IMG/VR virus record: IMGVR_UViG_3300031707_000001 | Span: 124,001-188,000 of that record | DNA length: 64,000 nucleotides | Reading direction: 5' to 3' (one strand) | Shown: in pieces, positions 13,096 to 40,319 of the stretch | Layout of the letters: the number at the start of each line of letters is the position of its first letter | Numbering within the stretch: the stretch's first letter is position 1 | Notes under the pieces: generated by a model | The model's database searches: none | Seen by the model: the letters and a program-made list of their open reading frames with translations, nothing else | What the model was told of the DNA's origin: nothing | Made by a program: the position numbers and the translations under genes

Positions 13096-13710
13096 ATGCG
13101 AATGAACAGTAATATGCAAAATTGGGCTAGGGGTCAGGTTCGTGGATATTTCTTCAACCCTAAGACCCTCGAACAGTGGGGCCACTTCCACATTAAGAAT
13201 GTAATCACCTACCGTGCTGCGGACATTATGGCACGCTTGCTTGGTGGAGACTCCAGCTACGTTCCGGGCTACATGGGTTTTGTCTATGGGGCATCAGCAA
13301 CTCCAGGTGCTGCGTTGATTGAACCGCCAACAGACCGGGAACAGACATGGGATAATTTGGCCGTTGAATTGGGCGATCCGGGAGTAACCGGAAATGTATT
13401 GATTACGCCTTTGACTGCGGGGCCAAGCTATGTTGTGGATGGCGATGCAAACAAATACAATGGCAACTCTGTTAACCTAGTAGCGCATACGGGCTCCCGG
13501 TTGGAATATGGTTTTCCTACCAGTTCACCGTATGCCGGCGTGTTGGCTGATGGGAATTACTTTTATCACGCCATGCTAATCACTCGTCTGGTTTCTGGAT
13601 CCACAATTACCTATTTACCTTTTGCCAGAGTTACATTGAAAGGTAGCAGTTATCCACAAAAGTCGGTCGGAAGTGAATTGGCGTTGTTTTGGAACGTTTC
13701 GTTTTTCTAA
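13096..13710 (+). CDS. Hypothetical baseplate/fibre-attachment protein
   Basis: KNVIT...FARVT...K....LALFWNVSF pattern resembles phage tail-fibre attachment domains. Confidence 0.5.
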   Translation: MRMNSNMQNWARGQVRGYFFNPKTLEQWGHFHIKNVITYRAADIMARLLGGDSSYVPGYMGFVYGASATPGAALIEPPTDREQTWDNLAVELGDPGVTGNVLITPLTAGPSYVVDGDANKYNGNSVNLVAHTGSRLEYGFPTSSPYAGVLADGNYFYHAMLITRLVSGSTITYLPFARVTLKGSSYPQKSVGSELALFWNVSFF

Positions 13711-13717
13711 TAATCAC

Positions 13718-14353
13718 ATGAACGTTATCTATTCTATAAGTAATTGTGTTGATGGGCAGACCTATATAGGCCAGTCATGCATAGGTTACAAAGAGCGTTG
13801 GAAGCGTCACCGTTTGCTGTTGAATGCTAATGCACACTTTAATACGCATTTGCAACGTGCATGGAATAAGTATGGAGCAGACAACTTTGAATTTAAGGTG
13901 TTATCACAGAATATTCCTGAATCATGGTTAGATCTTTCAGAGAGAGGTTGGATATTATTTCATAGACATACTTCTGGATGTTATAACCTTACTTCTGGCG
14001 GTAATACCCGAAAGCATTTTGCAGAAGAAACCAAATACAAAATTAGTGTTGCTACGCAGGGTCGGATACCTTGGAATCAGGGTAAACATACGTGCACTGA
14101 AGCACAAAGACAGATGTTGCGAGAACAGATGCTTGGCAATACACATGCTTGTGGTACAATACATTCAGCAGAGTTTTGTCGTCAAGTTAGTTTGCGTAGT
14201 TTGGGTAACAAGTTCTGGGCAGAACGTATCGGATATATGCATTCACCAGCGACCAAACAAAAAATGCAGTTAGCACACATTGGTTGCTGTCATTCAGAAG
14301 AGACCAAACAAAAACTCCGGGACGCTGCAAAACGTCGCTGGGCGAAGGAGTAG
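13718..14353 (+). CDS. Free-standing GIY-YIG homing endonuclease with NUMOD3-like repeats
   Basis: VIYSI...TYIGQS...RWKRH...HFNTHLQRAWNKYG...YNL; C-terminal HSxETKxK repeats. Confidence 0.9.
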   Translation: MNVIYSISNCVDGQTYIGQSCIGYKERWKRHRLLLNANAHFNTHLQRAWNKYGADNFEFKVLSQNIPESWLDLSERGWILFHRHTSGCYNLTSGGNTRKHFAEETKYKISVATQGRIPWNQGKHTCTEAQRQMLREQMLGNTHACGTIHSAEFCRQVSLRSLGNKFWAERIGYMHSPATKQKMQLAHIGCCHSEETKQKLRDAAKRRWAKE

Positions 14354-18918: not shown

Positions 18919-19053
18919 ATGAAGATAATAAATAAGGCCGCCCAAGCACTTGGTAGACTGGGAAAAGGTAGACCTAAAACGCTTTCAAAAGCAGAACGGA
19001 AACGCCGCTCTGATTGGATGATACATCTTAATGGAATTAGAAAATTACAATGA
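18919..19053 (+). CDS. 44-aa basic protein, probably leaderless, coupled to tnpB
   Basis: MKIINKAAQALGRLGKGRPKTLSKAERKRRSDWMIHLNGIRKLQ. ATG lies 6 nt after the -10 box and the stop overlaps the tnpB start (ATGA). Not in the supplied ORF track. Confidence 0.7.
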   Translation: MKIINKAAQALGRLGKGRPKTLSKAERKRRSDWMIHLNGIRKLQ

Positions 19054-20102
19054 TCGTCCGAACACTAAAACTTCGTTTGACAAAAGTGCAAGAAACCATA
19101 CTCAATCAGTGGCTTTGGCATCTTACTGGAGTCTGGAATTGGGCCATTAAGAAGATTGAACACGATGCACACGATAAGATTTATCATTTCAAATTTAACT
19201 TTATTAACCTTGTAGCTAATCATAGTAAATGTATGGGAGTTCCCTCGCACGTTATGCAAGGCATTCTTAGCCAAGCATATTTATCGTGGCAACGTTGTTT
19301 CAAGAAATTGGGCGGAAAACCACACCTTAAAGGACAACGCAATAAGCTTAACTCCATCCCGTTTCCGGATCCAATCAAATTTCCCAAAGATGGCAAAATC
19401 GGTATTCTGGGAATCGGAAAGGTCAGATTTTACAAACAGGATCTTCCTGATGCTAAAATCAAATGTGGGCGTATTGTTCACAGAGCGTCAGGTTGGTACC
19501 TTTGTTTATGGTTTGATTGTGACCACAAGTTTTTTGTAAAGCAAACAGATAAAGCTGTTGGTATCGATCCTGGCTTCAAAACTTTGCTAACGCTTTCCGA
19601 TGGCGTTAAAATTGAGAACCCGAGAGAACTTCATAGGGGTTCTGAACGTTTAGCACAAGCGCAACGAGGCAAACGTAAGCATCTTTCGGCTCGTTTGCAG
19701 GAACGTCAAGCCAATCGTCGGAGAGACCGAAACCACAAGATTTCCAGAAAGCTTGTTGAGAATTACAAGACTATATGCTATTCTGATGACAGTTTCAAAG
19801 GGATGGTAAAGCGTTTTGGAAAAAGCGTTAGCGAGGCAGGACTATCACAATTGGTACAAATGCTTGCGTACAAGTGCCGTACAGGCAGTCGTGAGCTAGT
19901 GCCAGTTGAATCTTTCAATACCACCAAGACCTGCTCGGTTTGCGGAGCCCTAACCGGCCCCACAGGACTTAGCGGGCTTGCGGTAAGGCAATGGACGTGC
20001 TCCGCTTGTGGGGCGGATTTGGACCGGGACATTAATGCGGCCCAAAACGTTTTGTTTGCCGGGCTCGGAGCGAGCCACTTGACAGAAATCCCCGGAGGTT
20101 AA
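19050..20102 (+). CDS. tnpB: TnpB-family RNA-guided endonuclease-like protein (IS200/IS605/IS607 type)
   Basis: N-terminal RTLKLRL...VWNWA, RuvC-I VGIDPG, zinc finger CSVC...CSAC, RuvC-III DRDINAA. No tnpA nearby. Confidence 0.92.
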   Translation: MIVRTLKLRLTKVQETILNQWLWHLTGVWNWAIKKIEHDAHDKIYHFKFNFINLVANHSKCMGVPSHVMQGILSQAYLSWQRCFKKLGGKPHLKGQRNKLNSIPFPDPIKFPKDGKIGILGIGKVRFYKQDLPDAKIKCGRIVHRASGWYLCLWFDCDHKFFVKQTDKAVGIDPGFKTLLTLSDGVKIENPRELHRGSERLAQAQRGKRKHLSARLQERQANRRRDRNHKISRKLVENYKTICYSDDSFKGMVKRFGKSVSEAGLSQLVQMLAYKCRTGSRELVPVESFNTTKTCSVCGALTGPTGLSGLAVRQWTCSACGADLDRDINAAQNVLFAGLGASHLTEIPGG

Positions 20103-31916: not shown

Positions 31917-34742
31917 TTATGCTCCTGCGATCATTCGTGGTAGCTGTACTACGTTGCTATTCGTTACCATACGTAAAACAATAGGCTCACCAATAATGTA
32001 TTTGTTCCAAATCATTCTGTCAAGAATCCAATACCGGTTGCGGTCGATGTCGAAGTCTTTGGCGGGGTGAATATGGTTGTAGCGTTCAAAATCTACACTA
32101 AGACTAGGCGGATTGAATACATTGCTATGTCGTCCCCACACATTTACAATATTGACTACACGGTGATCTATACAAACACAATCTTGCATCACGAAGATAG
32201 TAGGCAGATTGTCCTGGAGTTCTTTTTGGGTTGGAAATCCTTGGACGACACGAATAGGGCTCTTGTTCTCTGAAATTACTTCACCTAAGGCTTGCATGAA
32301 CATGTAGATGCAACTGATGCCATTGGCGGTGTAATAGTGCTTGATTACGTTTTCCATTTTCGTGTTGATGGGAACCCCAAGCGTACGGCACATGAGATGG
32401 TAAGCAGCCACGGCCGGAATTTCGGTATTGCGAAAGTCAGAGCGTTCTTCCACCGTCAATGTTTGGCTGGTTAATTCAAGCAGGATGCCAGGCAAGCTGG
32501 CTTGAAGTTGCATAATGTCTTCTGGTGCCAACGTATAGGTCTGTTGGGCCGTATAATCCGGGGTATCGATAAAGCTGATGCGGCTGTCACCCGTCAAAGC
32601 GATTGCAACTTCACTGTCAACAACTGATATGAGATTGACATCCAGTTCACCCAAAAGCTGCTTAATGCGATTGCAGGAAATATTGGGAAGTATCTGTATG
32701 CATGGCAGTGCGCCCAACTGCGATAGCTTCGCCAGATATTGTGTTACCTTTACGCTGGGCATGCGGGATACCTCATCGATATCGGCAAAGAGTTGATTCA
32801 GTTGTAGGTAAATAGGTGTCCAGATACCGGGGGTGGGTTCAACAAACAGCAAATGCTGTGGCACAGGCATTACCTTGTTTTCGTGACGGATTAGAGCGGC
32901 GATCAGATTATGTACGATGTGGCAAAAAGCGAATAAAAATCCGGCGATGTAAGGGTTTGTTTCGGCAACTTCCAGAAGTCTGCGCATGCTTGTGGACGAA
33001 TCGATAACAGCTGCTTCGTACCGCAATCCGTTGTAAAGCCGTAGAATGTCACGATCCAGTGTGAATACCTGATGTTGAGGCTCGACAAGTTTTCGGGCTG
33101 TATCAAGCACGAAATTTGGAAAATGTATCAGGGAGGAATTCACGCCAAGCGTTACGATTTCGTGGCGTACGTTTTTCCCTTCTGCCAATTTTGCCAGGAT
33201 ATCGGGCCAGGCAAATCCTTTTATTTCATAGAATGCAGGGTAGATCGATAGGCCTTGCCCAATAAAGACGCTACGGACGGCCTGCCGAAGATGGGCGGCC
33301 GATGTGAAAGCGTTCGAATGTAGGACTGCCGTAATAGCTGGGCCATCGCTGTCTGCACGTAATTTACAGACATATTTGATATCTTCACTTCGAGTCAATA
33401 TGCATTCTTCGACGGTGATGGCCACGTTGCTTAGTCGACGTTCTTCATTGTCAAATCCTAATGCCAAAAGTCCTGTGGTCGTCTGACGCAGTTCCCTGCC
33501 ATTAGCCAAACGTATTACGCTTTGTGGAAGCTGTCCGATTGTTTCGAGCAACGTAATCAATTCTGGAGGCACGACCATCGTGGCTGCCTTTTCGAGAAGC
33601 TCCGTACGTTGTTCCTTGGTTACGTTGTTGCTTTCAAAAGCTTTATAGATGACTTCGACATCTTTGTCTTCGATCAACTTGGCGAGCTTGTGTATGATCC
33701 ACGTATTCAAGGCTTCAGCAACGTGGTTGGGCTTAAGTGTTGGCGCTTCCAACGTATGGAGCGGAATGCTTTCCATCGGCCGGCCTTCAGGACCAACAAA
33801 GATAGGTACCTTCTTGTCCGGATGACCTTCAACAACTTCCGGGGCTGAAAATAGATGAAGGGCAAAAGCAAGGCTGAACTTGTATTCCTTGCTCGGCAAA
33901 ACTATGAGCCGTTCGATGTTGCGAAACCGGTGGGGTAACGGTAGGCCAGCCAAGCCAACCAGCGGCGGAGGTCGGGTTGAATATTCAGACCACCGCCGGT
34001 ACAAGTTGCAACAGACCATTTCGCTGGTAGCAGCAAAAAGGTCCTTGGTCGTATCCGAAACGTTGTTTTCCATGAACAGACCGATGTCCTTACGAACGAT
34101 CGGTATGGTTTGACTTGGAAGTGAATCTTCATCAAAATTCTGTACCCGAACATGCGTTACTTGTCCGTTGTACGTGTAGGGGTAAAGCGCACAGTGGGCT
34201 TTGCTGTGAGGTTTGAGTCCACGCAAGACTGGGGGTAAATCGTCTGGAATGAGCAATCCCAGCGTCTTGGGTACGTCATTCAGCGTCTGGCTGCCATATT
34301 GCAGGGCGCCGTGGGCAGCCATTTTATTGCGGAGCTTGGTGCCCTTAAGTGACTTTCTGATAGCGTTTTGTGTCTGAAGAAGGTAGTTGGAAATAGCCAA
34401 CTGGTTGGATTTGGAGTTGCGATACTCGTCTAACTGGCTGCCTGTAAAGTCTTCTTCAAGTATCGAAGCAAGTTCTTGTCCGGGAAGAAATAATCCAAAA
34501 GCTTCGTCCAACGAGATTTTTCGGACCTGCGCCAGCAGCATTACGGCATCCCCACTGAAATTGCAGTGGCTCTCGTTGCAGGTGAAACGCCAGGCGCCAT
34601 GGTCCGGATCACAAGCATCCCGGGCGATTCGAAGTGTATTTCCTAGGCCCGAATGGAGGGGGCAGGGCTGCAACGCTTCGGGTGTCGGATTCGTTATTGT
34701 GCAGCCAAGCTTCGTAAGAAATTCTATCCAGCGAATCTGCAT
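31917..34742 (-). CDS. Large primase-like protein with an N-terminal zinc-binding domain
   Basis: CPLH...FTCNESHCNFSGDAV.L......S..EA resembles the CHC2 zinc finger of DnaG. Downstream catalytic motifs are not recognisable. Confidence 0.5.
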   Translation of the reverse strand: MQIRWIEFLTKLGCTITNPTPEALQPCPLHSGLGNTLRIARDACDPDHGAWRFTCNESHCNFSGDAVMLLAQVRKISLDEAFGLFLPGQELASILEEDFTGSQLDEYRNSKSNQLAISNYLLQTQNAIRKSLKGTKLRNKMAAHGALQYGSQTLNDVPKTLGLLIPDDLPPVLRGLKPHSKAHCALYPYTYNGQVTHVRVQNFDEDSLPSQTIPIVRKDIGLFMENNVSDTTKDLFAATSEMVCCNLYRRWSEYSTRPPPLVGLAGLPLPHRFRNIERLIVLPSKEYKFSLAFALHLFSAPEVVEGHPDKKVPIFVGPEGRPMESIPLHTLEAPTLKPNHVAEALNTWIIHKLAKLIEDKDVEVIYKAFESNNVTKEQRTELLEKAATMVVPPELITLLETIGQLPQSVIRLANGRELRQTTTGLLALGFDNEERRLSNVAITVEECILTRSEDIKYVCKLRADSDGPAITAVLHSNAFTSAAHLRQAVRSVFIGQGLSIYPAFYEIKGFAWPDILAKLAEGKNVRHEIVTLGVNSSLIHFPNFVLDTARKLVEPQHQVFTLDRDILRLYNGLRYEAAVIDSSTSMRRLLEVAETNPYIAGFLFAFCHIVHNLIAALIRHENKVMPVPQHLLFVEPTPGIWTPIYLQLNQLFADIDEVSRMPSVKVTQYLAKLSQLGALPCIQILPNISCNRIKQLLGELDVNLISVVDSEVAIALTGDSRISFIDTPDYTAQQTYTLAPEDIMQLQASLPGILLELTSQTLTVEERSDFRNTEIPAVAAYHLMCRTLGVPINTKMENVIKHYYTANGISCIYMFMQALGEVISENKSPIRVVQGFPTQKELQDNLPTIFVMQDCVCIDHRVVNIVNVWGRHSNVFNPPSLSVDFERYNHIHPAKDFDIDRNRYWILDRMIWNKYIIGEPIVLRMVTNSNVVQLPRMIAGA

Positions 34743-35302
34743 AACGTATTCCAGCGTTTTAGATAATCAATTGCTCGTTCTAAATACTTCGTGTTGTCGT
34801 GGAAGCTGCCCAGGCCTTTATTACAAGCACTACATAATATACCTCGAACTTGGTTGGTGTTGTGGTCGTGGTCCGTACTTTTATCTCGATCGTTTATAAA
34901 AACTTGTTGGCATATAGCACAAACACCATCCTGTTCAGAAATAAGTTTATTGCGCTCATCTAAGGTTATACCATAGTGTTTTTGAAAATACCAGTTTCTT
35001 CGTTGTTGGGTAGTACGTATTGTCCAATCATGATGCCACTTCCTTGCATATTCAAGATGATTTTGTCGCCAAAGTGTGGCCTTAACGCTTTGGTTTTTTC
35101 TATGACATTTTGGGCAACGGTACTGCGTTTTTCCGGTTTTGGTAAACGGTTTGTGGCAGTCTATACAAGTTGGAATTTTTTGCGTTCTAATTTTGTTACA
35201 AAGTTCAATACATTCAGAACAACGTTTCTGATAACGTATTCTGAAAAATTTCGTATGACAAAGTGTGCAGGTTGAAGTTTTAGGCATATGCTTCTTTTTC
35301 AT
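34724..35302 (-). CDS. Endonuclease VII-family HNH homing endonuclease
   Basis: YGITL...QDGVCAIC...DHDH.T.QVRGILC..CNKGLG.F.DN...L.RAI.YL; N-terminal CxxC repeats. Confidence 0.92.
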   Translation of the reverse strand: MKKKHMPKTSTCTLCHTKFFRIRYQKRCSECIELCNKIRTQKIPTCIDCHKPFTKTGKTQYRCPKCHRKNQSVKATLWRQNHLEYARKWHHDWTIRTTQQRRNWYFQKHYGITLDERNKLISEQDGVCAICQQVFINDRDKSTDHDHNTNQVRGILCSACNKGLGSFHDNTKYLERAIDYLKRWNTLCRFAG

Positions 35303-35559: not shown

Positions 35560-36657
35560 ATGGACTTGCTACACGATCTGAGTGGACGACGTTGGCTGGA
35601 ACTTGCTGATCGGCATGAAGCTATCATACCTGCGTATGTGATGACTTCGGAAATGCCAAGCAAAGAAGCTGCAGCAGAATTGGAAGATGCGTTGTTTGCG
35701 GATCCTGCTCGCAGACTCTTTCCTGTTGATACACCAGCGGCGACCTGGTTATCTGCAGCCTACTTCTTGAAAAATGCAGCAACACTTCCTTACAAGAAAG
35801 ACGAAAAGGCTTTCGTCTTGGCTCGCATCGAAAAGGCGGCCGAAATCCATGGGGTCAGGGGTGATACAGAAAAGATTGCCGCAGCCATTCAAGCAGAGGA
35901 TGGTACGGAAAAGCAAGCCGAAGATAACGATGAGAATTACGGCTGGGTCATGGTAAGCGAAGCCACGGGACAGGTACTTGCACGCAAGTATCCCATGTTC
36001 GACGATCGTGGCGTCAAAATGGCTAGCTCGTACTTCGACGAAAACCGCAGTCATTATCCGATGGCCATACGCCGGACGATCGCCCGCAACATTATGAAGC
36101 GGGCAGAAGTCCACGGCGTTGGCATCGATGAACTACATCCTTCGGTGTTGCGTGAGGCCGGCTATGGAATTCCTCGCAAGGACGTATTGATGGAGGAAAT
36201 CCTGGAACGAGCCTACCTGACCAAGGACGCTGAATGTGCTGTTCTACTGGCCAACATCAACGAGATGATTGCTGCTCTGCCGGAAGAAGACATAGCACAG
36301 AGCCTGGACAAGATTGCTGAAGTCATTGAGGCTTACGACAGGACGTCGGATCTTACTCGTTACTACGGCACGAAGATCCTGATGCCTGCCGACTTCCTGT
36401 TCGACGTCAATATGAAGACGGCGGAGGAACTTGTGGCCGATGCGGTTGAGTTGGACCGTCATGTGTTCAGCCTGACCAAGTTGGCGGAATTACCGGCGCA
36501 GATGTACCAGGAAATTCTTGGCGAAGAGTTTGCTAAGGCAATCGTCAAGTCCGGTACGACGCAGGTCGACAAGGAAAAGCTTGCCGATAATCTGTACTCG
36601 TTACCCAAGCCGGATAAAGTTGCCCTCGAAGAGCATCTCGCCGAAATCTTCGGTTAA
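35560..36657 (+). CDS. Hypothetical protein with an internal duplication and many K-x-A motifs (possible head morphogenesis)
   Basis: AAGGAG RBS. Repeated unit RLFPVD...SAAYF...IEKAAEIHGV / RKYPMFD...ASSYF...IMKRAEVHGV. Confidence 0.65.
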   Translation: MDLLHDLSGRRWLELADRHEAIIPAYVMTSEMPSKEAAAELEDALFADPARRLFPVDTPAATWLSAAYFLKNAATLPYKKDEKAFVLARIEKAAEIHGVRGDTEKIAAAIQAEDGTEKQAEDNDENYGWVMVSEATGQVLARKYPMFDDRGVKMASSYFDENRSHYPMAIRRTIARNIMKRAEVHGVGIDELHPSVLREAGYGIPRKDVLMEEILERAYLTKDAECAVLLANINEMIAALPEEDIAQSLDKIAEVIEAYDRTSDLTRYYGTKILMPADFLFDVNMKTAEELVADAVELDRHVFSLTKLAELPAQMYQEILGEEFAKAIVKSGTTQVDKEKLADNLYSLPKPDKVALEEHLAEIFG

Positions 36658-36684
36658 CAACCGTCGATCAAACAGGAGGTGCTC

Positions 36685-37350
36685 ATGATGGGGGAACTCC
36701 AGGCTAAGCAATCTGCTCTCCAGACGCCTGAGACCCTGGCCACCGTGGTCCATGCCATTGTGCGAAAGCAATATGGCGAGGACGCATATGGTTGGGATCC
36801 AACGACGGTCTTTCTGGAATTGCAAGCAGACTTCCATGCCGACGTCGATACAACAGTCTTGGACCGCTGGTCAGCCATTTCGGTTATCATGACCAGTGAT
36901 GCTTTCTTCAAACGGTTGGATGCCTTCATGGGCATTTGCAATACGCTATCGTCTGGAGAACCGTTTTTCCAAGTATTCGACCCGGTAACGACGGAAGAGG
37001 TAGCTTGGGCTGTTGCTGAGGTTTCCTTGAATAGGGAACTTCTGCCGTTCAGTTATCCCATTCGGAAGTACATGAGGATGATGCTGGAGCAAGACGGTTA
37101 TGATCCAATGAACTATCCTGATCTCTTTCAGGAAATCATGGGGAAGAACCCCCGTGCCGAGGAAATCCGGAAGATCATTGGTCCGAGTACAAATCCGAAC
37201 CAAGGAAACATCGACGGTTATATTGACGAGCAACTGAAGGATATGGTATACCAGCTCAACAAGATTCCTGATTTGAAGGATTTGGATGACATCATCCTAC
37301 AACGTTCAATGGACGAATTTGTTGGAACAGTGGTAAAGAAAGTCGTGTAA
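36685..37350 (+). CDS. Hypothetical protein
   Basis: AGGAGG RBS; acidic, 221 aa. Confidence 0.7.
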   Translation: MMGELQAKQSALQTPETLATVVHAIVRKQYGEDAYGWDPTTVFLELQADFHADVDTTVLDRWSAISVIMTSDAFFKRLDAFMGICNTLSSGEPFFQVFDPVTTEEVAWAVAEVSLNRELLPFSYPIRKYMRMMLEQDGYDPMNYPDLFQEIMGKNPRAEEIRKIIGPSTNPNQGNIDGYIDEQLKDMVYQLNKIPDLKDLDDIILQRSMDEFVGTVVKKVV

Positions 37351-37354
37351 TATC

Positions 37355-38173
37355 ATGGCAGAGTACGCTCCAGTAACACTCGGGGTGCAAAAGCAGGGAC
37401 CAAACGTCGCTCTGATCAAACAAGGTCAACCGAACCTGTGCAGGCAACCTGAGACGCCTTCGTGTTTACCTGTGGCCGTTACTGGAGCCACTCTGTCCAA
37501 TGCAGCAAAGAAGTATTGTTACAAATGCAGACAAGATGTTTCAATAACCTGTTTTCGTAAAAATCGGGCTAAGAAAGACGGATTAAGTGATGAGTGTAAT
37601 TCGTGTCATGCCAAATATCAAAGGTACCGATGGTGGCATCAAACGATTACAGAACAAATGCGTACTAAGCATTATGCTAGAAACAAGCGTTATAGTAAGA
37701 CAGAAAAAGGAAAACTGAGTCATAGAAGAAGCTATATTAAATGGGCGCATAGTGCGAAAGGTTTGCTTTCTATTCGGCGTAGTATCAAAAAATACAATAG
37801 TTCACCAACAGGACGTTTGCGTTGCAGTTTGACACAGCACTTGTATCGAGCATTAAAACAAAATAAAGCAGGGCGTGCTTGGGAACAATTGGTGGGATAC
37901 AATGTGCATCAGTTAAAGGCGCATTTAGAATCTCAATTTGAGCCTGGTATGACTTGGGAAAATTATGGCCGAAATGGTTGGAATATAGACCACATTGTTC
38001 CAATCGTTGAGTTTAGTAAATATGCATTTGATTCCTCAGCAATCCAAACGTGTTTTGCACTTTCCAATCTTATGCCTCGTTGGGAGACTACCAAGATTGC
38101 ACAGACGTATGGAAGCGCACAAATTGGAAATTTCAATAAAGGGTCCAAAATACTCCAAGGTATGACAATATGA
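37355..38173 (+). CDS. HNH homing endonuclease
   Basis: CYKC...KDGL...CNSC N-terminal zinc module; LKAHLESQF..GMTWENYG...WNIDHIVP...CF...NL...N..KG. Confidence 0.9.
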   Translation: MAEYAPVTLGVQKQGPNVALIKQGQPNLCRQPETPSCLPVAVTGATLSNAAKKYCYKCRQDVSITCFRKNRAKKDGLSDECNSCHAKYQRYRWWHQTITEQMRTKHYARNKRYSKTEKGKLSHRRSYIKWAHSAKGLLSIRRSIKKYNSSPTGRLRCSLTQHLYRALKQNKAGRAWEQLVGYNVHQLKAHLESQFEPGMTWENYGRNGWNIDHIVPIVEFSKYAFDSSAIQTCFALSNLMPRWETTKIAQTYGSAQIGNFNKGSKILQGMTI

Positions 38174-39924
38174 AAGAATATGCACCAGGAATTGTTAACA
38201 AGGAAAATTATGGGGATCCAACCCGAAGTCTTGAAGCCGGGCAGTTGGCCGATTATGTCCTTCAACACCATACCACACACCGACATCCTAATACGCCTCA
38301 TTTGGATTTACGCATAGGCACACCAGCGACGGGTATGCATTCGTGGGCAATTCCTAAGGCTAAACTTCCAACAGCCGACGAGAAAAATTTAGCTATACAA
38401 ACGCAAATCCATTCCCCCGGATACAATACATTTCAGGGAAGCATTCGTAGTGGCTACGGCGAAGGTTTTGTTCGAAGACAGGATTTAGGAAAAGCACTTT
38501 TAACGAAAGTAACCCCCAACAGCGTATCGTTCACCATTTCTCATACCAAAGTTCCGGTGCGATACTCTTTGATTAGAATGGGAACTCGGGACGGAAGAAA
38601 CGGAAGAGATTGGTTGCTTGTTCACAAAGCTATTCCAAAAACCGTTGAAGGCGTTGGAGACAAGCCCAAGTACAAACTTATTGAGGCGGTCGATTTAGAT
38701 GATGCGCTTGAGCAGGCAACTGAAGTACAGGAAAAAATAGATGGTGCTGGAGGGGTCTACGAAATTGGATCTAAAGGTGAAACCGAAGCCTATAGTGTTA
38801 ATCCCCGGAAAACGGGTGAGCCAATTGTTCATACTGAGCGTACGGGATTGACTGGCGTAAAATCTCCTGAGGCTTTGTCAGGTACGACTCTTAGAGGTGA
38901 AATCTATGCCACGGATCCAAAAGGAAAGGCTATTCCTTTTCAAGAGTTGAGCGGGATTTTGAACTCAACGATCGCTAAAGCAGTAGAAACACGCCGAGTC
39001 AAAAAGCTGAAGATGCAACACGCTATATTCGATATTATTAAACACAAAGGTAAGGACGTATCCCAATTGCCTTTTGAAGAACGTAAGTCCCTTTTGAAGG
39101 AAGTAGTACCGCAGTTACCGTCCGAACACTTTCATTCCCCGCTATCGGCCACGGAAGAAGAGGATAAGACCCGGATGTTGGAAGACATTCGTACCGGAAA
39201 AAATCCCCGAACTTCTGAAGGTATTATCATGCACCTTCCCGGTAATAAGGTGTGGAAGTACAAGTTTCGTCCCGAATCCCGGGGATACGTTACGGGTGTC
39301 TTTCCGGGCAAAGCCGGCCGTACGGGATTGCCTGGCGGCGTAACATTCTCGGAGACCCCAGGCGGTGAAGAACTAGGACACCTTGGCTCAGGTTTCACGG
39401 TAGATGAACTCAAAGATATTGCCAAGAACCTGGAAGCCTACAAGACCAAACCAATGCGAATCACGCACATGGGCAAGTTCCCAGCCGGTACGCTACGAGC
39501 GCCCGTGTTCAGCGGATGGGAGACCGATGTAAAGGAAAGTACTGATATGCGCATGAAGATTTCTCCTTTGGTACGTGCTTTTGTCAAACAGGCTTTGACG
39601 GCCACTACAAGCGGACAGACGGCCGATGCTACAACAGCACCGCAGGCTGGTTATGCCATGAAGCCTTACGGCGATCAAGGCTACGATGCTTCGTTAACGC
39701 CTCAACGGGATCTTGCCCGTACAGGCTCTCCTGGAGCGCAGATACAACCCGGTCCCGAGATCCAACCGTTCTACAATCCGGCAGCAAGACCCGGTGTACC
39801 TGCAGGCGTGGTAGCACGACCTGGGACGGGTACATTGACAGCCAGTGAATCCGGACAAGCCGGGCAGGTCAAGAAATTCCTGACACCAAAAGGTGGTCCA
39901 ATCGCTACAGCAACAGGAACCTAA
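38170..39924 (+). CDS. ATP-dependent DNA ligase fused to an N-terminal LigD-type 3'-phosphoesterase domain
   Basis: PE domain: Q.H.......HLDLR...SWAIPK...LAIQT..H...Y..F.G.I..GYG.G. Ligase motifs: EKIDG, RGEI, FDI, EGII, KYK, GSGFT, LRAPVF. Confidence 0.9.
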   Translation: MKEYAPGIVNKENYGDPTRSLEAGQLADYVLQHHTTHRHPNTPHLDLRIGTPATGMHSWAIPKAKLPTADEKNLAIQTQIHSPGYNTFQGSIRSGYGEGFVRRQDLGKALLTKVTPNSVSFTISHTKVPVRYSLIRMGTRDGRNGRDWLLVHKAIPKTVEGVGDKPKYKLIEAVDLDDALEQATEVQEKIDGAGGVYEIGSKGETEAYSVNPRKTGEPIVHTERTGLTGVKSPEALSGTTLRGEIYATDPKGKAIPFQELSGILNSTIAKAVETRRVKKLKMQHAIFDIIKHKGKDVSQLPFEERKSLLKEVVPQLPSEHFHSPLSATEEEDKTRMLEDIRTGKNPRTSEGIIMHLPGNKVWKYKFRPESRGYVTGVFPGKAGRTGLPGGVTFSETPGGEELGHLGSGFTVDELKDIAKNLEAYKTKPMRITHMGKFPAGTLRAPVFSGWETDVKESTDMRMKISPLVRAFVKQALTATTSGQTADATTAPQAGYAMKPYGDQGYDASLTPQRDLARTGSPGAQIQPGPEIQPFYNPAARPGVPAGVVARPGTGTLTASESGQAGQVKKFLTPKGGPIATATGT

Positions 39925-40319
39925 TGGACGAAGTTACATTACATTTTGTGGATAAGGCGGGCAATGTCAAAGCCGAAGTAGCTGCCGAGATTGCAGAAAC
40001 ACCAGCCGATCGGCGTATGGGGCTTTCCAAGCGAGCATTTCTTCCATCCGGTAGAGGCATGTTTTTTGACAAGGCTGGAGCCTTTTGGATGAAGGATGTC
40101 AACTTTCCATTGGACATCGTTTTCTTGGATAAGCAGGGAACCGTACTTGAGAAACAGCATATGCCACAGGTCGAAGAGCCTACAGCATTGAAGCCACTTT
40201 ATGTGTCTTCGTCCAAGGAAGCTGCACATGCTTTGGAACTGCCGGCTGGCTGGTTTGATCGTCAAGGTTTGGCTGTAGGAATGAAACTTAGGCCAGTAGA
40301 GAGCAGACTGGACAGATGA
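39924..40319 (+). CDS. DUF192-family protein
   Basis: EIAETP..R..GL..R..L....GM.F....FWMKDV.FPLDIVFLD...ALELPAG. Confidence 0.9.
   Translation: MDEVTLHFVDKAGNVKAEVAAEIAETPADRRMGLSKRAFLPSGRGMFFDKAGAFWMKDVNFPLDIVFLDKQGTVLEKQHMPQVEEPTALKPLYVSSSKEAAHALELPAGWFDRQGLAVGMKLRPVESRLDR

What the first reader, a model, noticed from the sequence alone, without database searches (positions are those of the whole stretch)
37355..38190. HNH gene that captured the ligase 5' end and supplies a recoded copy
Seen: the HNH ORF starts ATGGCAGAGTACGCTCCAG (MAEYAP). The downstream ligase, whose start overlaps the HNH stop, begins ATGAAAGAATATGCACCAG (MKEYAP), nearly the same peptide with different codons. Inference: the element inserted after codon 6 of the ligase, uses the old start for itself, and restores the host gene with a cleavage-resistant recoded start. 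This would let it invade a gene without splicing.
Basis: partly seen in the sequence, partly recalled or inferred. Interest (0 to 1): 0.7.

Follow-up and report, generated by a model that had tools for sequence, protein, structure and literature searches.

The report
Homing nuclease fused to ligase relic
In this 211-kb environmental phage, a selfish nuclease gene sits inside the old front end of the phage's DNA ligase gene. It is read from the ligase's original start codon and is followed by a complete ligase gene whose front end is a diverged replacement copy, a layout previously described mainly, in mirror image, in fungal mitochondria.

Summary
ORF 37355-38173 starts MAEYAP, and the ligase (38170-39924) starts MKEYAP with an ATGA overlap.

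- **Native start confirmed.** An HNH-free relative (L089/L090) has the ligase directly after the upstream gene. Its first 19 nt are identical to window 37355-37373.
- **The relic is longer than six codons.** All of 37355-37513 aligns colinearly with ligase codons 1-73 of that relative. It lacks about 60 nt (codons ~10-29) and carries a compensated frameshift.
- **Nature of the leader.** It is absent from all 98 collected homologues of the nuclease, has host-like GC, is predicted disordered, and its peptide is not conserved.
- **No start codon at the nuclease core's own N-terminus.** The core (37514-38173) has 39% GC, in the lowest 0.3% of genome windows.
- **The working ligase copy is diverged at its front.** Its first ~115 codons are 56-61% identical to relatives that are 72-82% identical to each other. 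After that it is 82-86% identical to its nearest relative.
- **Shared derived start.** Both nuclease-bearing lineages start the ligase with ATGAAAG..TAT.

The likeliest reading is a free-standing homing endonuclease travelling with a replacement 5' ligase segment. Cleavage, immunity and translation from the captured start are inferred, not tested.

The parts
36685..37350 (+). Upstream gene 'up223' (221 aa, unknown function). It is the conserved left neighbour of the ligase in relatives; its stop lies 4 nt before the captured start.
   Evidence: 163 homologues. Synteny DUF6582 gene - up223 - ligase in L006, L017, L024, L027, L046, L047, L050, L053 and L089.
37355..37373 (+). Original ligase start (ATG plus codons 2-6 and the first base of codon 7), now the start of the nuclease ORF.
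   Evidence: 19/19 identical to the ligase start of HNH-free L089/L090, and 17/19 to L027 and L047. The working ligase copy matches at only 14/19.
37355..37513 (+). Leader: a decayed relic of the resident ligase 5' end (codons 1-73 of the intact gene). It lacks about 60 nt (codons ~10-29, deletion point near 37383). It has a -1 shift near 37395 that is compensated by +4 near 37420. It stays open and in frame with the nuclease core.
   Evidence: Alignment A5. Leader nt 20-159 versus L089 ligase: local score 33, z = 7.4, 0 of 2000 shuffles. GC 54% and GC3 51%, like the flanking genes. Absent from 98 nuclease homologues. pLDDT below 55 with no secondary structure. Nucleotide identity to the L055 leader is 79% but amino-acid identity only 58%; to L056 the figures are 70% and 24%.
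37514..38173 (+). Nuclease core: a CxxC...CxxC zinc ribbon, a helical region and a DH...N motif (probable beta-beta-alpha-Me / HNH-type homing endonuclease). It has no start codon at its own N-terminus; the only in-frame alternative is the GTG at 37472, inside the leader.
   Evidence: Family alignments A1 and A6 start at K53-Y54-C55. At least 565 relatives in viral contigs, none next to a ligase among the 80 examined. GC 38.6%, in the lowest 0.3% of genome windows, and GC3 31%. PHROG 1035 at E = 1e-8. Core pLDDT above 90.
38170..38173 (+). ATGA overlap between the nuclease stop and the ligase start (a translational-coupling arrangement).
   Evidence: The same overlap is present in L005 and L022.
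38170..38515 (+). The strongly diverged 5' tract of the working ligase (codons 1 to ~115), carrying the replacement copy of the region also represented by the relic.
   Evidence: 56-61% amino-acid identity to L005, L089, L006 and L027, which are 72-82% identical to each other. Terminal branch 0.97 against a median of 0.35. 57% nucleotide identity to L089 over codons 1-73. GC3 35%.
38170..39924 (+). Complete ATP-dependent DNA ligase with a LigD-type 3'-phosphoesterase domain. From codon ~116 it is closest to L005 (82-86% amino-acid identity). Low GC3 persists to about 39160.
   Evidence: (family-invariant residues present).

Best explanation
The 272-aa ORF is a chimera.

**What the sequence shows**
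- Its first 159 nt are what is left of the phage's own ligase 5' end. This covers codons 1-73, now carrying a 60-nt deletion and a compensated frameshift.
- The remaining 660 nt are a low-GC zinc-ribbon nuclease of a family that is very common in phage contigs. The nuclease core has no start codon at its own N-terminus.
- Immediately downstream, overlapping the nuclease stop, is a complete ligase gene. Its first ~115 codons are abnormally diverged, and its start (ATGAAAG..TAT) is a derived form shared with the other nuclease-bearing lineage.

**Inferred mechanism**
- The nuclease is a free-standing homing endonuclease that travels together with a replacement copy of the ligase 5' end.
- Its arrival displaced the resident 5' end upstream, where it became fused in frame to the nuclease.
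- The nuclease is therefore translated from the old ligase start, coupled to the stop of the upstream gene 4 nt away. The ligase is then re-initiated at the ATGA overlap. The host gene stays whole without an intron or intein.
- The diverged 5' copy, and the deletion in the relic, would remove the nuclease's target from its own genome.
- Spread to nuclease-free relatives would be by double-strand-break repair with co-conversion of the adjacent ligase sequence.

**Shown:** the relic, its homology and extent, the presence/absence polymorphism, the composition break, and the mosaic ligase.
**Inferred:** nuclease activity, target location, immunity, use of the captured start, and a foreign donor.
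For: - **Nuclease-free ancestral-type state.** In L089/L090 the upstream gene's stop is followed by 4 nt and then a ligase start identical over 19 nt to window 37355-37373.
- **Colinear homology of the whole leader.** It aligns with ligase codons 1-73, and the same ~60-nt deletion is shared by the leaders of the window, L055 and L056. The test excluding the first 19 nt gives z = 7.4, 0 of 2000 shuffles.
- **The leader is foreign to the nuclease family.** A1/A6 and 98 homologues show family members starting 1-12 residues before the first CxxC. The 80 viral loci examined contain no leader and no ligase.
- **Sharp composition break at 37513/37514.** GC3 runs 51 (leader), 31 (nuclease core), 35 and 40 (ligase 5' tracts), then 49 (ligase 3' part); flanking genes are 56-57.
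- **The leader peptide evolves freely but stays open.** Nucleotide versus amino-acid identity is 79/58% and 70/24%, against 78/85% for the neighbouring gene. AlphaFold2 predicts residues 1-50 as disordered.
- **Mosaic ligase.** Residues 1-120 are 56-61% identical to all relatives, while residues 120-409 are 82-86% identical to L005. The breakpoint is near codon 115, and the two segments place the window differently in trees.
- **Second nuclease-bearing lineage.** In L005/L022 the tract next to the nuclease is the most diverged part: codons 1-45 are 58-66% identical in nucleotides to L089, against 89% for codons 46-75. That lineage has the same ATGA overlap and the same derived ATGAAAG..TAT start.
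- **Presence/absence polymorphism and a variable slot** at this locus in relatives.
- **No + strand promoter-like site** between the upstream genes and the ligase beyond chance, which is consistent with one operon.
- **Known precedents.** Co-conversion, start/stop overlaps and gene-invading free-standing endonucleases in T4-like phages (PMC2988022). Endonuclease ORFs carrying a foreign gene terminus and displacing the native one in fungal mitochondria (PMC3630166).
Against: - There is no biochemical evidence that the nuclease is active or what it cuts.
- No curated HNH model reaches threshold, and structure searches give only weak beta-beta-alpha-Me and zinc-ribbon matches.
- No donor lineage for the diverged ligase tract was found. 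Its long branch could equally reflect accelerated evolution in place.
- Low GC3 extends to about 39160, well beyond the amino-acid-divergent tract. One simple co-conversion event does not explain everything.
- The founding event that duplicated codons 1-73 is not resolved.
- The open frame through the leader could be partly luck. P(no stop in 47 codons) is about 0.14, before the frame requirement.
- An in-frame GTG at 37472 cannot be excluded as the real start.
- Contigs L005 and L022 end before the nuclease N-terminus, so whether they carry the relic is unknown.
- No nuclease-less variant of this phage itself was seen in four sediment runs, although those are contigs, which hide rare variants.
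Confidence: 0.7

Rival explanations
1. The element inserted after codon 6 of the ligase, and its 3' end supplies a recoded six-codon start.
For: Similarity visible by eye stops after 19 nt. The two starts differ mostly at synonymous positions.
Against: The leader beyond nt 19 is still ligase-derived, up to codon 73 (z = 7.4). The apparent stop in similarity is an internal 60-nt deletion shared by three lineages. The diverged tract of the working copy is about 115 codons long, not 6.
Confidence: 0.07
2. Local tandem duplication of the ligase 5' end, followed by independent insertion of the nuclease between the copies. Both copies then diverged in place, with no foreign ligase segment and no element-borne replacement copy.
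For: No donor was found. The window's N-terminal tract is a long terminal branch rather than a clear member of another clade. L005's ligase next to its nuclease is only mildly diverged after codon 45.
Against: The composition break coincides exactly with the relic/nuclease junction, and low GC3 continues from the nuclease into the ligase. Both nuclease-bearing lineages share the derived ATGAAAG..TAT start. In both, divergence peaks immediately next to the nuclease.
Confidence: 0.17
3. A frozen accident. The nuclease is no longer mobile, either inactive or domesticated. The fusion persists only because breaking the reading frame would uncouple ligase translation.
For: The nucleases of the window and L005 are only 55-58% identical, while their ligases are 76-78% identical, so the arrangement is old. 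No nuclease-less variant was seen in the runs.
Against: All family-invariant residues are kept: the four zinc-ribbon Cys, D212, H213 and N238. The core is predicted with high confidence. The differing lengths of the diverged tracts in the two lineages suggest repeated exchange.
Confidence: 0.2
4. The MAEYAP match is chance, or the leader is a genuine N-terminal domain of the nuclease.
For: The leader peptide (residues 7-53) scored no better than shuffles against an HMM of ligase N-termini.
Against: 19/19 nt identity to L089 at the same genomic position. DNA-level colinear homology. The leader is absent from all family members. It has host-like GC and is predicted disordered. The peptide test failed because of the deletion and the frameshift.
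Confidence: 0.01
5. The nuclease lies in an intron or intein, and the ligase is restored by splicing.
For: None beyond the position of the nuclease inside former ligase sequence.
Against: The ligase ORF is complete with the family's native N-terminus. There is no group I or II intron match. There are no intein motifs or Pfam hits.
Confidence: 0.01

Closest known systems
Mobile endonuclease ORFs (mORFs) that create gene hybrids in fungal mitochondria: Allomyces macrogynus atp6, and Glomus atp6, atp9, cox2 and nad3 (PMC3630166)
   Same: An endonuclease ORF travels with a diverged copy of one end of the host gene. The insertion is in phase with the host gene. The native end is displaced, stays closer in nucleotides to relatives, and decays. 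The host gene remains functional without splicing.
   Different: This case is the mirror image. The 5' end is duplicated, not the 3' end, and the native relic lies upstream and is fused to the endonuclease rather than left downstream. The host is a dsDNA phage and the nuclease is a zinc-ribbon/HNH-like type, not LAGLIDADG or GIY-YIG. The relic also supplies the endonuclease's start codon.
Free-standing homing endonucleases of T4-like phages (seg and mob genes; intronless homing) (PMC2988022)
   Same: A nuclease gene between or inside phage genes. Presence/absence polymorphism among relatives. Atypical composition. Co-conversion of flanking host sequence. Start/stop overlaps that suggest translational coupling, such as mobE with UAAUGA.
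   Different: The T4 examples sit in intergenic positions or split the host gene into two working pieces. No case is described there of a duplicated host 5' end with the old copy fused to the nuclease.
Genes-in-pieces created by endonuclease insertion: mobE in Aeh1 nrdA and mobA in T4 topoisomerase (PMC2988022)
   Same: The endonuclease gene landed inside a conserved coding region, and the host function survived.
   Different: In those cases the host protein is made as two polypeptides that reassemble. Here the host gene is whole because a second 5' end is present, and the old 5' piece is a decaying relic.
Intron-encoded endonucleases read in frame with the upstream exon (organellar group I introns; from general knowledge, not checked here)
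   Same: The endonuclease borrows the translation start of the host gene by in-frame fusion to upstream host coding sequence.
   Different: There is no intron here. The upstream 'exon' is a non-functional relic, not part of the expressed host protein.

Membership tests
HNH / beta-beta-alpha-Me nuclease superfamily | Match to a curated HNH-type profile | tested here: inconclusive
   No Pfam or NCBIfam hit for the window protein. Pfam HNH and HNH_4 appear only sub-threshold, in 2-3 of 16 family members. PHROG 1035 'endonuclease VII' at E = 1e-8. Precomputed PF07510 and PF13392 on two homologues. hhalign against the window's own Endonuclease_7 protein found nothing in the catalytic part.
HNH / beta-beta-alpha-Me nuclease superfamily | Conserved catalytic His with Asn/His metal ligands on a beta-beta-alpha fold | tested here: inconclusive
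   D212-H213 and N238 are invariant in 61 sequences. The model has a strand-strand-helix at 209-233/239-251 with pLDDT above 90. Foldseek's top hits are EXOG, EndoG, Cas9-HNH and Hpy99I, but at E above 1. The best VIA-align match is the Hpy99I zinc ribbon, Z = 4.7.
Free-standing homing endonuclease gene (intronless homing) | Presence/absence polymorphism at one locus among related genomes | tested here: met
   Present in the window, L005, L022 and probably L056. Absent in L089/L090, L046, L006, L027 and L047.
Free-standing homing endonuclease gene (intronless homing) | Composition unlike the host genome, and a mosaic or co-converted flank | tested here: met
   GC 38.6%, in the lowest 0.3% of genome windows. 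Low GC3 continues into the ligase. The ligase breakpoint is near codon 115 in the window and near codon 45 in L005.
Free-standing homing endonuclease gene (intronless homing) | Site-specific cleavage of the endonuclease-free allele, and preferential inheritance | not testable with these tools
   Needs purified protein and L089-type target DNA, or a co-infection or plasmid homing assay.
mORF-type gene hybrid (fungal mitochondria) | Endonuclease ORF flanked by two copies of one gene end, with the native copy closer to relatives than the working copy | tested here: met
   The relic's start matches L089 at 19/19, against 14/19 for the working copy. The relic shows significant similarity to the L089 ligase, while its similarity to the window's own working copy is nil (z = 7.4 versus -0.5).
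mORF-type gene hybrid (fungal mitochondria) | The duplicated end is the carboxy-terminal one, and the native copy is displaced downstream | tested here: not met
   Here the amino-terminal end is duplicated, and the native copy lies upstream, fused to the nuclease. The arrangement works like a mORF hybrid but is a mirrored variant in a phage.
Intron- or intein-borne endonuclease | Ribozyme fold or intein splicing blocks around the endonuclease | tested here: not met
   No Rfam intron family at E <= 1 in 36500-40000. No intein domains. The ligase ORF is complete.
LigD-type ligase (the host gene) | 3'-phosphoesterase domain plus ATP-dependent ligase domain. A full LigD also has a polymerase domain. 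| tested here: met
   LigD_N scores 45.3 bits against a cut-off of 31.1. DNA_ligase_A_M scores 42.5 against 26.2. The motif I sequence KIDG is present. No polymerase domain is found, so this is a two-domain relative and not a full LigD.

The most novel reading that the evidence does not exclude
Phage homing endonucleases may be able to invade the interior of an essential ORF without an intron or intein. They would do so by carrying a diverged replacement copy of the gene's 5' end. The displaced native 5' end would then serve three roles: it donates the start codon and translational coupling, it acts as the left homology arm for further homing, and, after deletion of the target, it makes the carrier genome immune. 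That would be a 5'-end counterpart of the fungal mitochondrial mORF gene hybrids, and possibly a general route of gene-end exchange between phages.
Probability: 0.35. Interest if true: 0.7.

Novelty: new variant of a known kind. Interest (0 to 1): 0.55.

Why it matters
**Why it matters**
- It shows, with a nuclease-free relative as reference, how a selfish nuclease can settle inside a conserved phage gene and leave the gene working.
- It does this by duplicating and replacing the gene's front end and then living off the gene's old start codon.
- That is a third solution beside splicing elements (introns and inteins) and 'genes in pieces'.

**Practical consequences**
- Chimeric ORFs of this kind will be mis-annotated as nucleases with unknown N-terminal domains.
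- The ligase's odd N-terminal divergence would be misread as fast evolution.
- Relics of this type give a datable footprint of past homing events, and a candidate map of where the nuclease's target lies.

Tried and rejected
- **Peptide HMM of ligase N-termini against leader residues 7-53.** No signal: score -1.0, and 33% of shuffles scored as well. This was misleading, because the relic has a deletion and a frameshift. The DNA alignment to L089 was what worked.
- **Second half of the leader tested alone against L089.** Not significant on its own (z = 0.7-1.8). Its homology rests on colinearity in A5 and on the L055 leader (z = 7.9).
- **Search for the upstream gene in viral contigs with the single protein.** Only one weak locus.
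- **16-nt leader pattern in viral contigs.** 32 hits, scattered over unrelated contigs and not checked further.
- **Is the leader a remnant of the 90-103 aa membrane ORF that fills this slot in many relatives?** That ORF family is absent from the whole genome (best E = 0.016 elsewhere), and it shows no similarity to the leader.
- **Nature of the long protein behind the same leader in L055.** The representative-library search found a 550-610 aa family of unknown function and no ligase. A viral-contig scan found nothing.
- **PDB profile search, Foldseek, VIA-align and hhalign for the nuclease fold.** Inconclusive.
- **Laying contigs of four sediment runs on the locus.** No nuclease-less joints.
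- **Contigs without DNA.** The contigs for P0132, P0134, P0135 and P0106 returned gene tables but no DNA. The 1449-aa LigD_N protein that starts 3 nt after the upstream gene in the P0135 contig could therefore not be read.
Full report
**1. The observation**

The window belongs to a complete 210,732-bp virus record with direct terminal repeats and 48% GC. ORF 37355..38173 (+, 272 aa) begins ATGGCAGAGTACGCTCCAG (MAEYAP). ORF 38170..39924 (+, 584 aa) begins ATGAAAGAATATGCACCAG (MKEYAP), and its ATG overlaps the upstream TGA.

The downstream protein has a LigD-type 3'-phosphoesterase domain and an ATP-dependent ligase domain, both above Pfam's cut-offs (NCBIfam). The same arrangement is present, base for base, in independent assemblies from several sediment samples, so it is not an assembly artefact.

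**2. The nuclease and its leader**

The 272-aa protein hits no Pfam or NCBIfam model. It matches PHROG 1035 'endonuclease VII' at E = 1e-8 and has 98 homologues in the large protein collection. At least 565 relatives occur in viral contigs.

Alignments A1 and A6 show that the family begins at about K53-Y54-C55-x-x-C58. Homologues start a median of 10 residues before their first CxxC (half of them between 4 and 25). It has two CxxC pairs, a helical middle region and an invariant D212-H213...N238 motif.

Residues 1-53 of the window protein have no counterpart in any homologue. AlphaFold2, using the 61-sequence alignment, gives pLDDT above 90 for the core. For residues 1-50 it gives pLDDT below 55 and no secondary structure.

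Fold searches return only weak matches to beta-beta-alpha-Me nucleases and to the Hpy99I zinc ribbon. I therefore call it a probable HNH-type nuclease, not a proven one.

**3. Composition**

| Segment | GC | GC3 |
|---|---|---|
| Flanking genes | 48-51% | 56-57% |
| Leader 37355-37513 | 54% | 51% |
| Nuclease core 37514-38173 | 38.6% (lowest 0.3% of genome windows) | 31% |
| Ligase codons 1-115 | 45% | 35% |
| Ligase codons 116-330 | 45% | 40% |
| Ligase codons 331-584 | 54% | 49% |

The break falls exactly at the leader/core junction. It fades inside the ligase.

**4. Relatives**

Ligase homologues show that M-x-(E/D)-(Y/F)-A-P-G-I is the family's native N-terminus. This includes genomes with no nuclease nearby, such as L047 (MPEYAPGI), L027 (MADYAPGI) and P0103/P0105 (MPDFAPGI).

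The block DUF6582 gene - up223 - ligase is syntenic in many relatives, but the slot between up223 and the ligase is variable:
- A 90-103 aa membrane ORF fills it in L006, L017, L027, L047, L052 and L053.
- Nothing fills it in L046.
- The nuclease fills it in L005 and L022.

The membrane ORF family is absent from the window's genome.

**5. The decisive relatives**

Searching with up223 found closer kin.

*L089 and L090.* Their up223 is 72% identical to the window's, and they come from three samples. The stop of up223 is followed by 4 nt and then directly by the ligase, MAEYAPGIPDK.... Its first 19 nt are identical to window 37355-37373.

*The rest of the leader.* Alignment A5 shows it is also ligase-derived. 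Window 37355-37513 aligns colinearly with L089 ligase codons 1-73. About 60 nt (codons ~10-29) are missing. There is a -1 shift that a +4 insertion about 25 nt further on restores.

The junction with the nuclease core falls after AAG AAG (K52 K53), which corresponds to ligase Q71-K72-K73. That is just upstream of the conserved LAPQTQxH motif.

*Significance tests.* With the first 19 nt left out, the leader matches the L089 ligase with z = 7.4 (0 of 2000 shuffles). It shows no similarity to the window's own working ligase copy (z = -0.5). The 3' half of the leader is not significant when tested alone. It is supported by colinearity and by the better-preserved L055 leader (z = 7.9).

**6. The relic is shared and decaying**

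L055 (up223 85% identical) and L056 (79%) carry the same relic, with the same 60-nt deletion, directly after up223. It therefore arose once.
- In L056 the relic is followed by a CxxC protein that fits the start of the nuclease family.
- In L055 it is followed by an unrelated protein of more than 238 aa. That protein belongs to a 550-610 aa family of unknown function that is absent from the window's genome.

Between the window and L055 the relic is 79% identical in nucleotides but only 58% in amino acids. Against L056 the figures are 70% and 24%. For up223 over the same comparison they are 78% and 85%. The peptide is therefore not under purifying selection, yet in all three genomes the frame from the old ATG into the downstream gene is open.

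The only alternative in-frame start near the core is a GTG at 37472, which has no Shine-Dalgarno-like sequence upstream. This suggests, but does not prove, that the captured start is the one used. Chance openness of 47 codons has P of about 0.14.

**7. The working ligase copy is a mosaic**

Over residues 1-120 the window's ligase is 56-61% identical to L005, L089, L006 and L027, which are 72-82% identical to each other. Over residues 120-409 it is 82-86% identical to L005. The switch is near codon 115, about 38515.

In trees, the N-terminal segment has a terminal branch of 0.97 (median 0.35) and falls outside the clade of its close kin, with only moderate support. The next segment has a branch of 0.11 and pairs with L005.

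In L005, which also carries the nuclease, the tract next to the nuclease is likewise the most diverged part. Codons 1-45 are 58-66% identical in nucleotides to L089, against 89% for codons 46-75. Nuclease-free pairs show no such dip.

Both nuclease-bearing lineages begin the ligase with ATGAAAG..TAT. Nuclease-free relatives and the relic have ATGGCAGA(G/T)TAC or ATGCCCGAGTAC. The 5' end linked to the nuclease thus looks like a distinct allele that goes with the nuclease.

**8. Interpretation**

The structure is: native ligase 5' relic, then nuclease, then a complete ligase with a diverged 5' tract.

The best-supported reading is a free-standing homing endonuclease that moves together with a replacement copy of the adjacent ligase 5' end, with co-conversion tracts of different lengths in different lineages. 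[quoted passage not shown]

The closest described architecture is the endonuclease 'mORF' gene hybrid of fungal mitochondria. There, a foreign carboxy-terminal segment and an endonuclease ORF are inserted in phase, and the native carboxy-terminus is displaced and decays (PMC3630166). The present case is its mirror image at the 5' end, in a phage. It has the added twist that the displaced native end is fused to the endonuclease and supplies its start.

No promoter-like site beyond chance lies between the upstream genes and the ligase. The stops and starts are 4 nt apart or overlapping. Translation through up223, the leader-nuclease fusion and the ligase may therefore be coupled, which would explain why the leader frame is kept open. 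The deletion in the relic and the divergence of the working copy may have removed the nuclease's target. All of this paragraph is inference.

**9.

The details do not hold:
- There is no junction after codon 6.
- The relic reaches codon 73.
- The replaced tract is about 115 codons or more.
- The proposed target junction is not meaningful.
- Splicing is neither needed nor indicated.

**10. Limits**

- No donor for the diverged tract was identified.
- Accelerated evolution in place remains possible.
- The founding duplication event is unresolved.
- Contigs L005 and L022 stop before the nuclease N-terminus.
- Several informative contigs returned no DNA.
- Nuclease activity, target and immunity are untested.
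- I found no phage example of this architecture in the papers searched. That is not proof that none exists.

Noticed in passing
window 34724-35302 (-): A second low-GC nuclease gene (192 aa; Pfam Endonuclease_7 at E = 4e-25, with zinc-ribbon repeats) lies between the 941-aa primase-like gene and the DUF6582 gene. Relatives L006 and the P0135 contig have those two genes adjacent with no gene called between them, so this looks like another presence/absence homing-type insertion.
   Followed up: partly
window 13673-14353 (+), window 19050-20102 (+), and genome 35227-35946, 57869-58426, 88578-89339, 201576-202295, 208445-209119: The genome has about 11 islands of 40% GC or less. Most of them encode zinc-ribbon or HNH-like ORFs. 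One is GIY-YIG-like (window 13673-14353) and one is TnpB/OrfB-like (window 19050-20102), judged by eye from the sequence only. The phage appears heavily colonised by mobile nuclease genes.
   Followed up: partly
L055:1509-2222 and the P0135 contig (no DNA): In L055 the same ligase relic is fused to a different gene, from a 550-610 aa family of unknown function (P0251, P0252). About 25 nt after the relic resemble the start of the nuclease core in another frame, which hints that a nuclease was replaced there. In the P0135 contig, a 1449-aa ORF with LigD_N and ligase domains starts 3 nt after up223. It could be a relic-X-ligase read-through, but it could not be read.
   Followed up: partly
L006:4722-4994, L027:977-1261, L047:3686-3997, L052:646-957, L053:1400-1705, L017:3663-3968: A conserved 90-103 aa predicted membrane protein (MKKAWQTTEFW...) occupies the slot between up223 and the ligase in many relatives. 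It is absent from the window's whole genome. The slot is a hot spot for gene turnover.
   Followed up: partly
window 37868-37981: In the sediment runs, contig depth spikes only over the conserved ESQFEPGMTWENYG-coding stretch. Many loose ends there lead into unrelated sequence. Many other members of this nuclease family therefore live in the same communities.
   Followed up: no
window 39924-40319 (+): The DUF192 gene is separate here and overlaps the ligase stop. In several relatives (for example P0101, P0103, P0104, P0107, P0108) it is fused to the ligase as a C-terminal domain, sometimes together with a 2'-5' RNA ligase domain.
   Followed up: no
P0102 (ligase relative, 896 aa): This ligase carries a 62-aa cysteine-rich (zinc-ribbon-like) extension in front of the conserved EYAPGI motif. 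It may be another fusion at the ligase 5' end.
   Followed up: no
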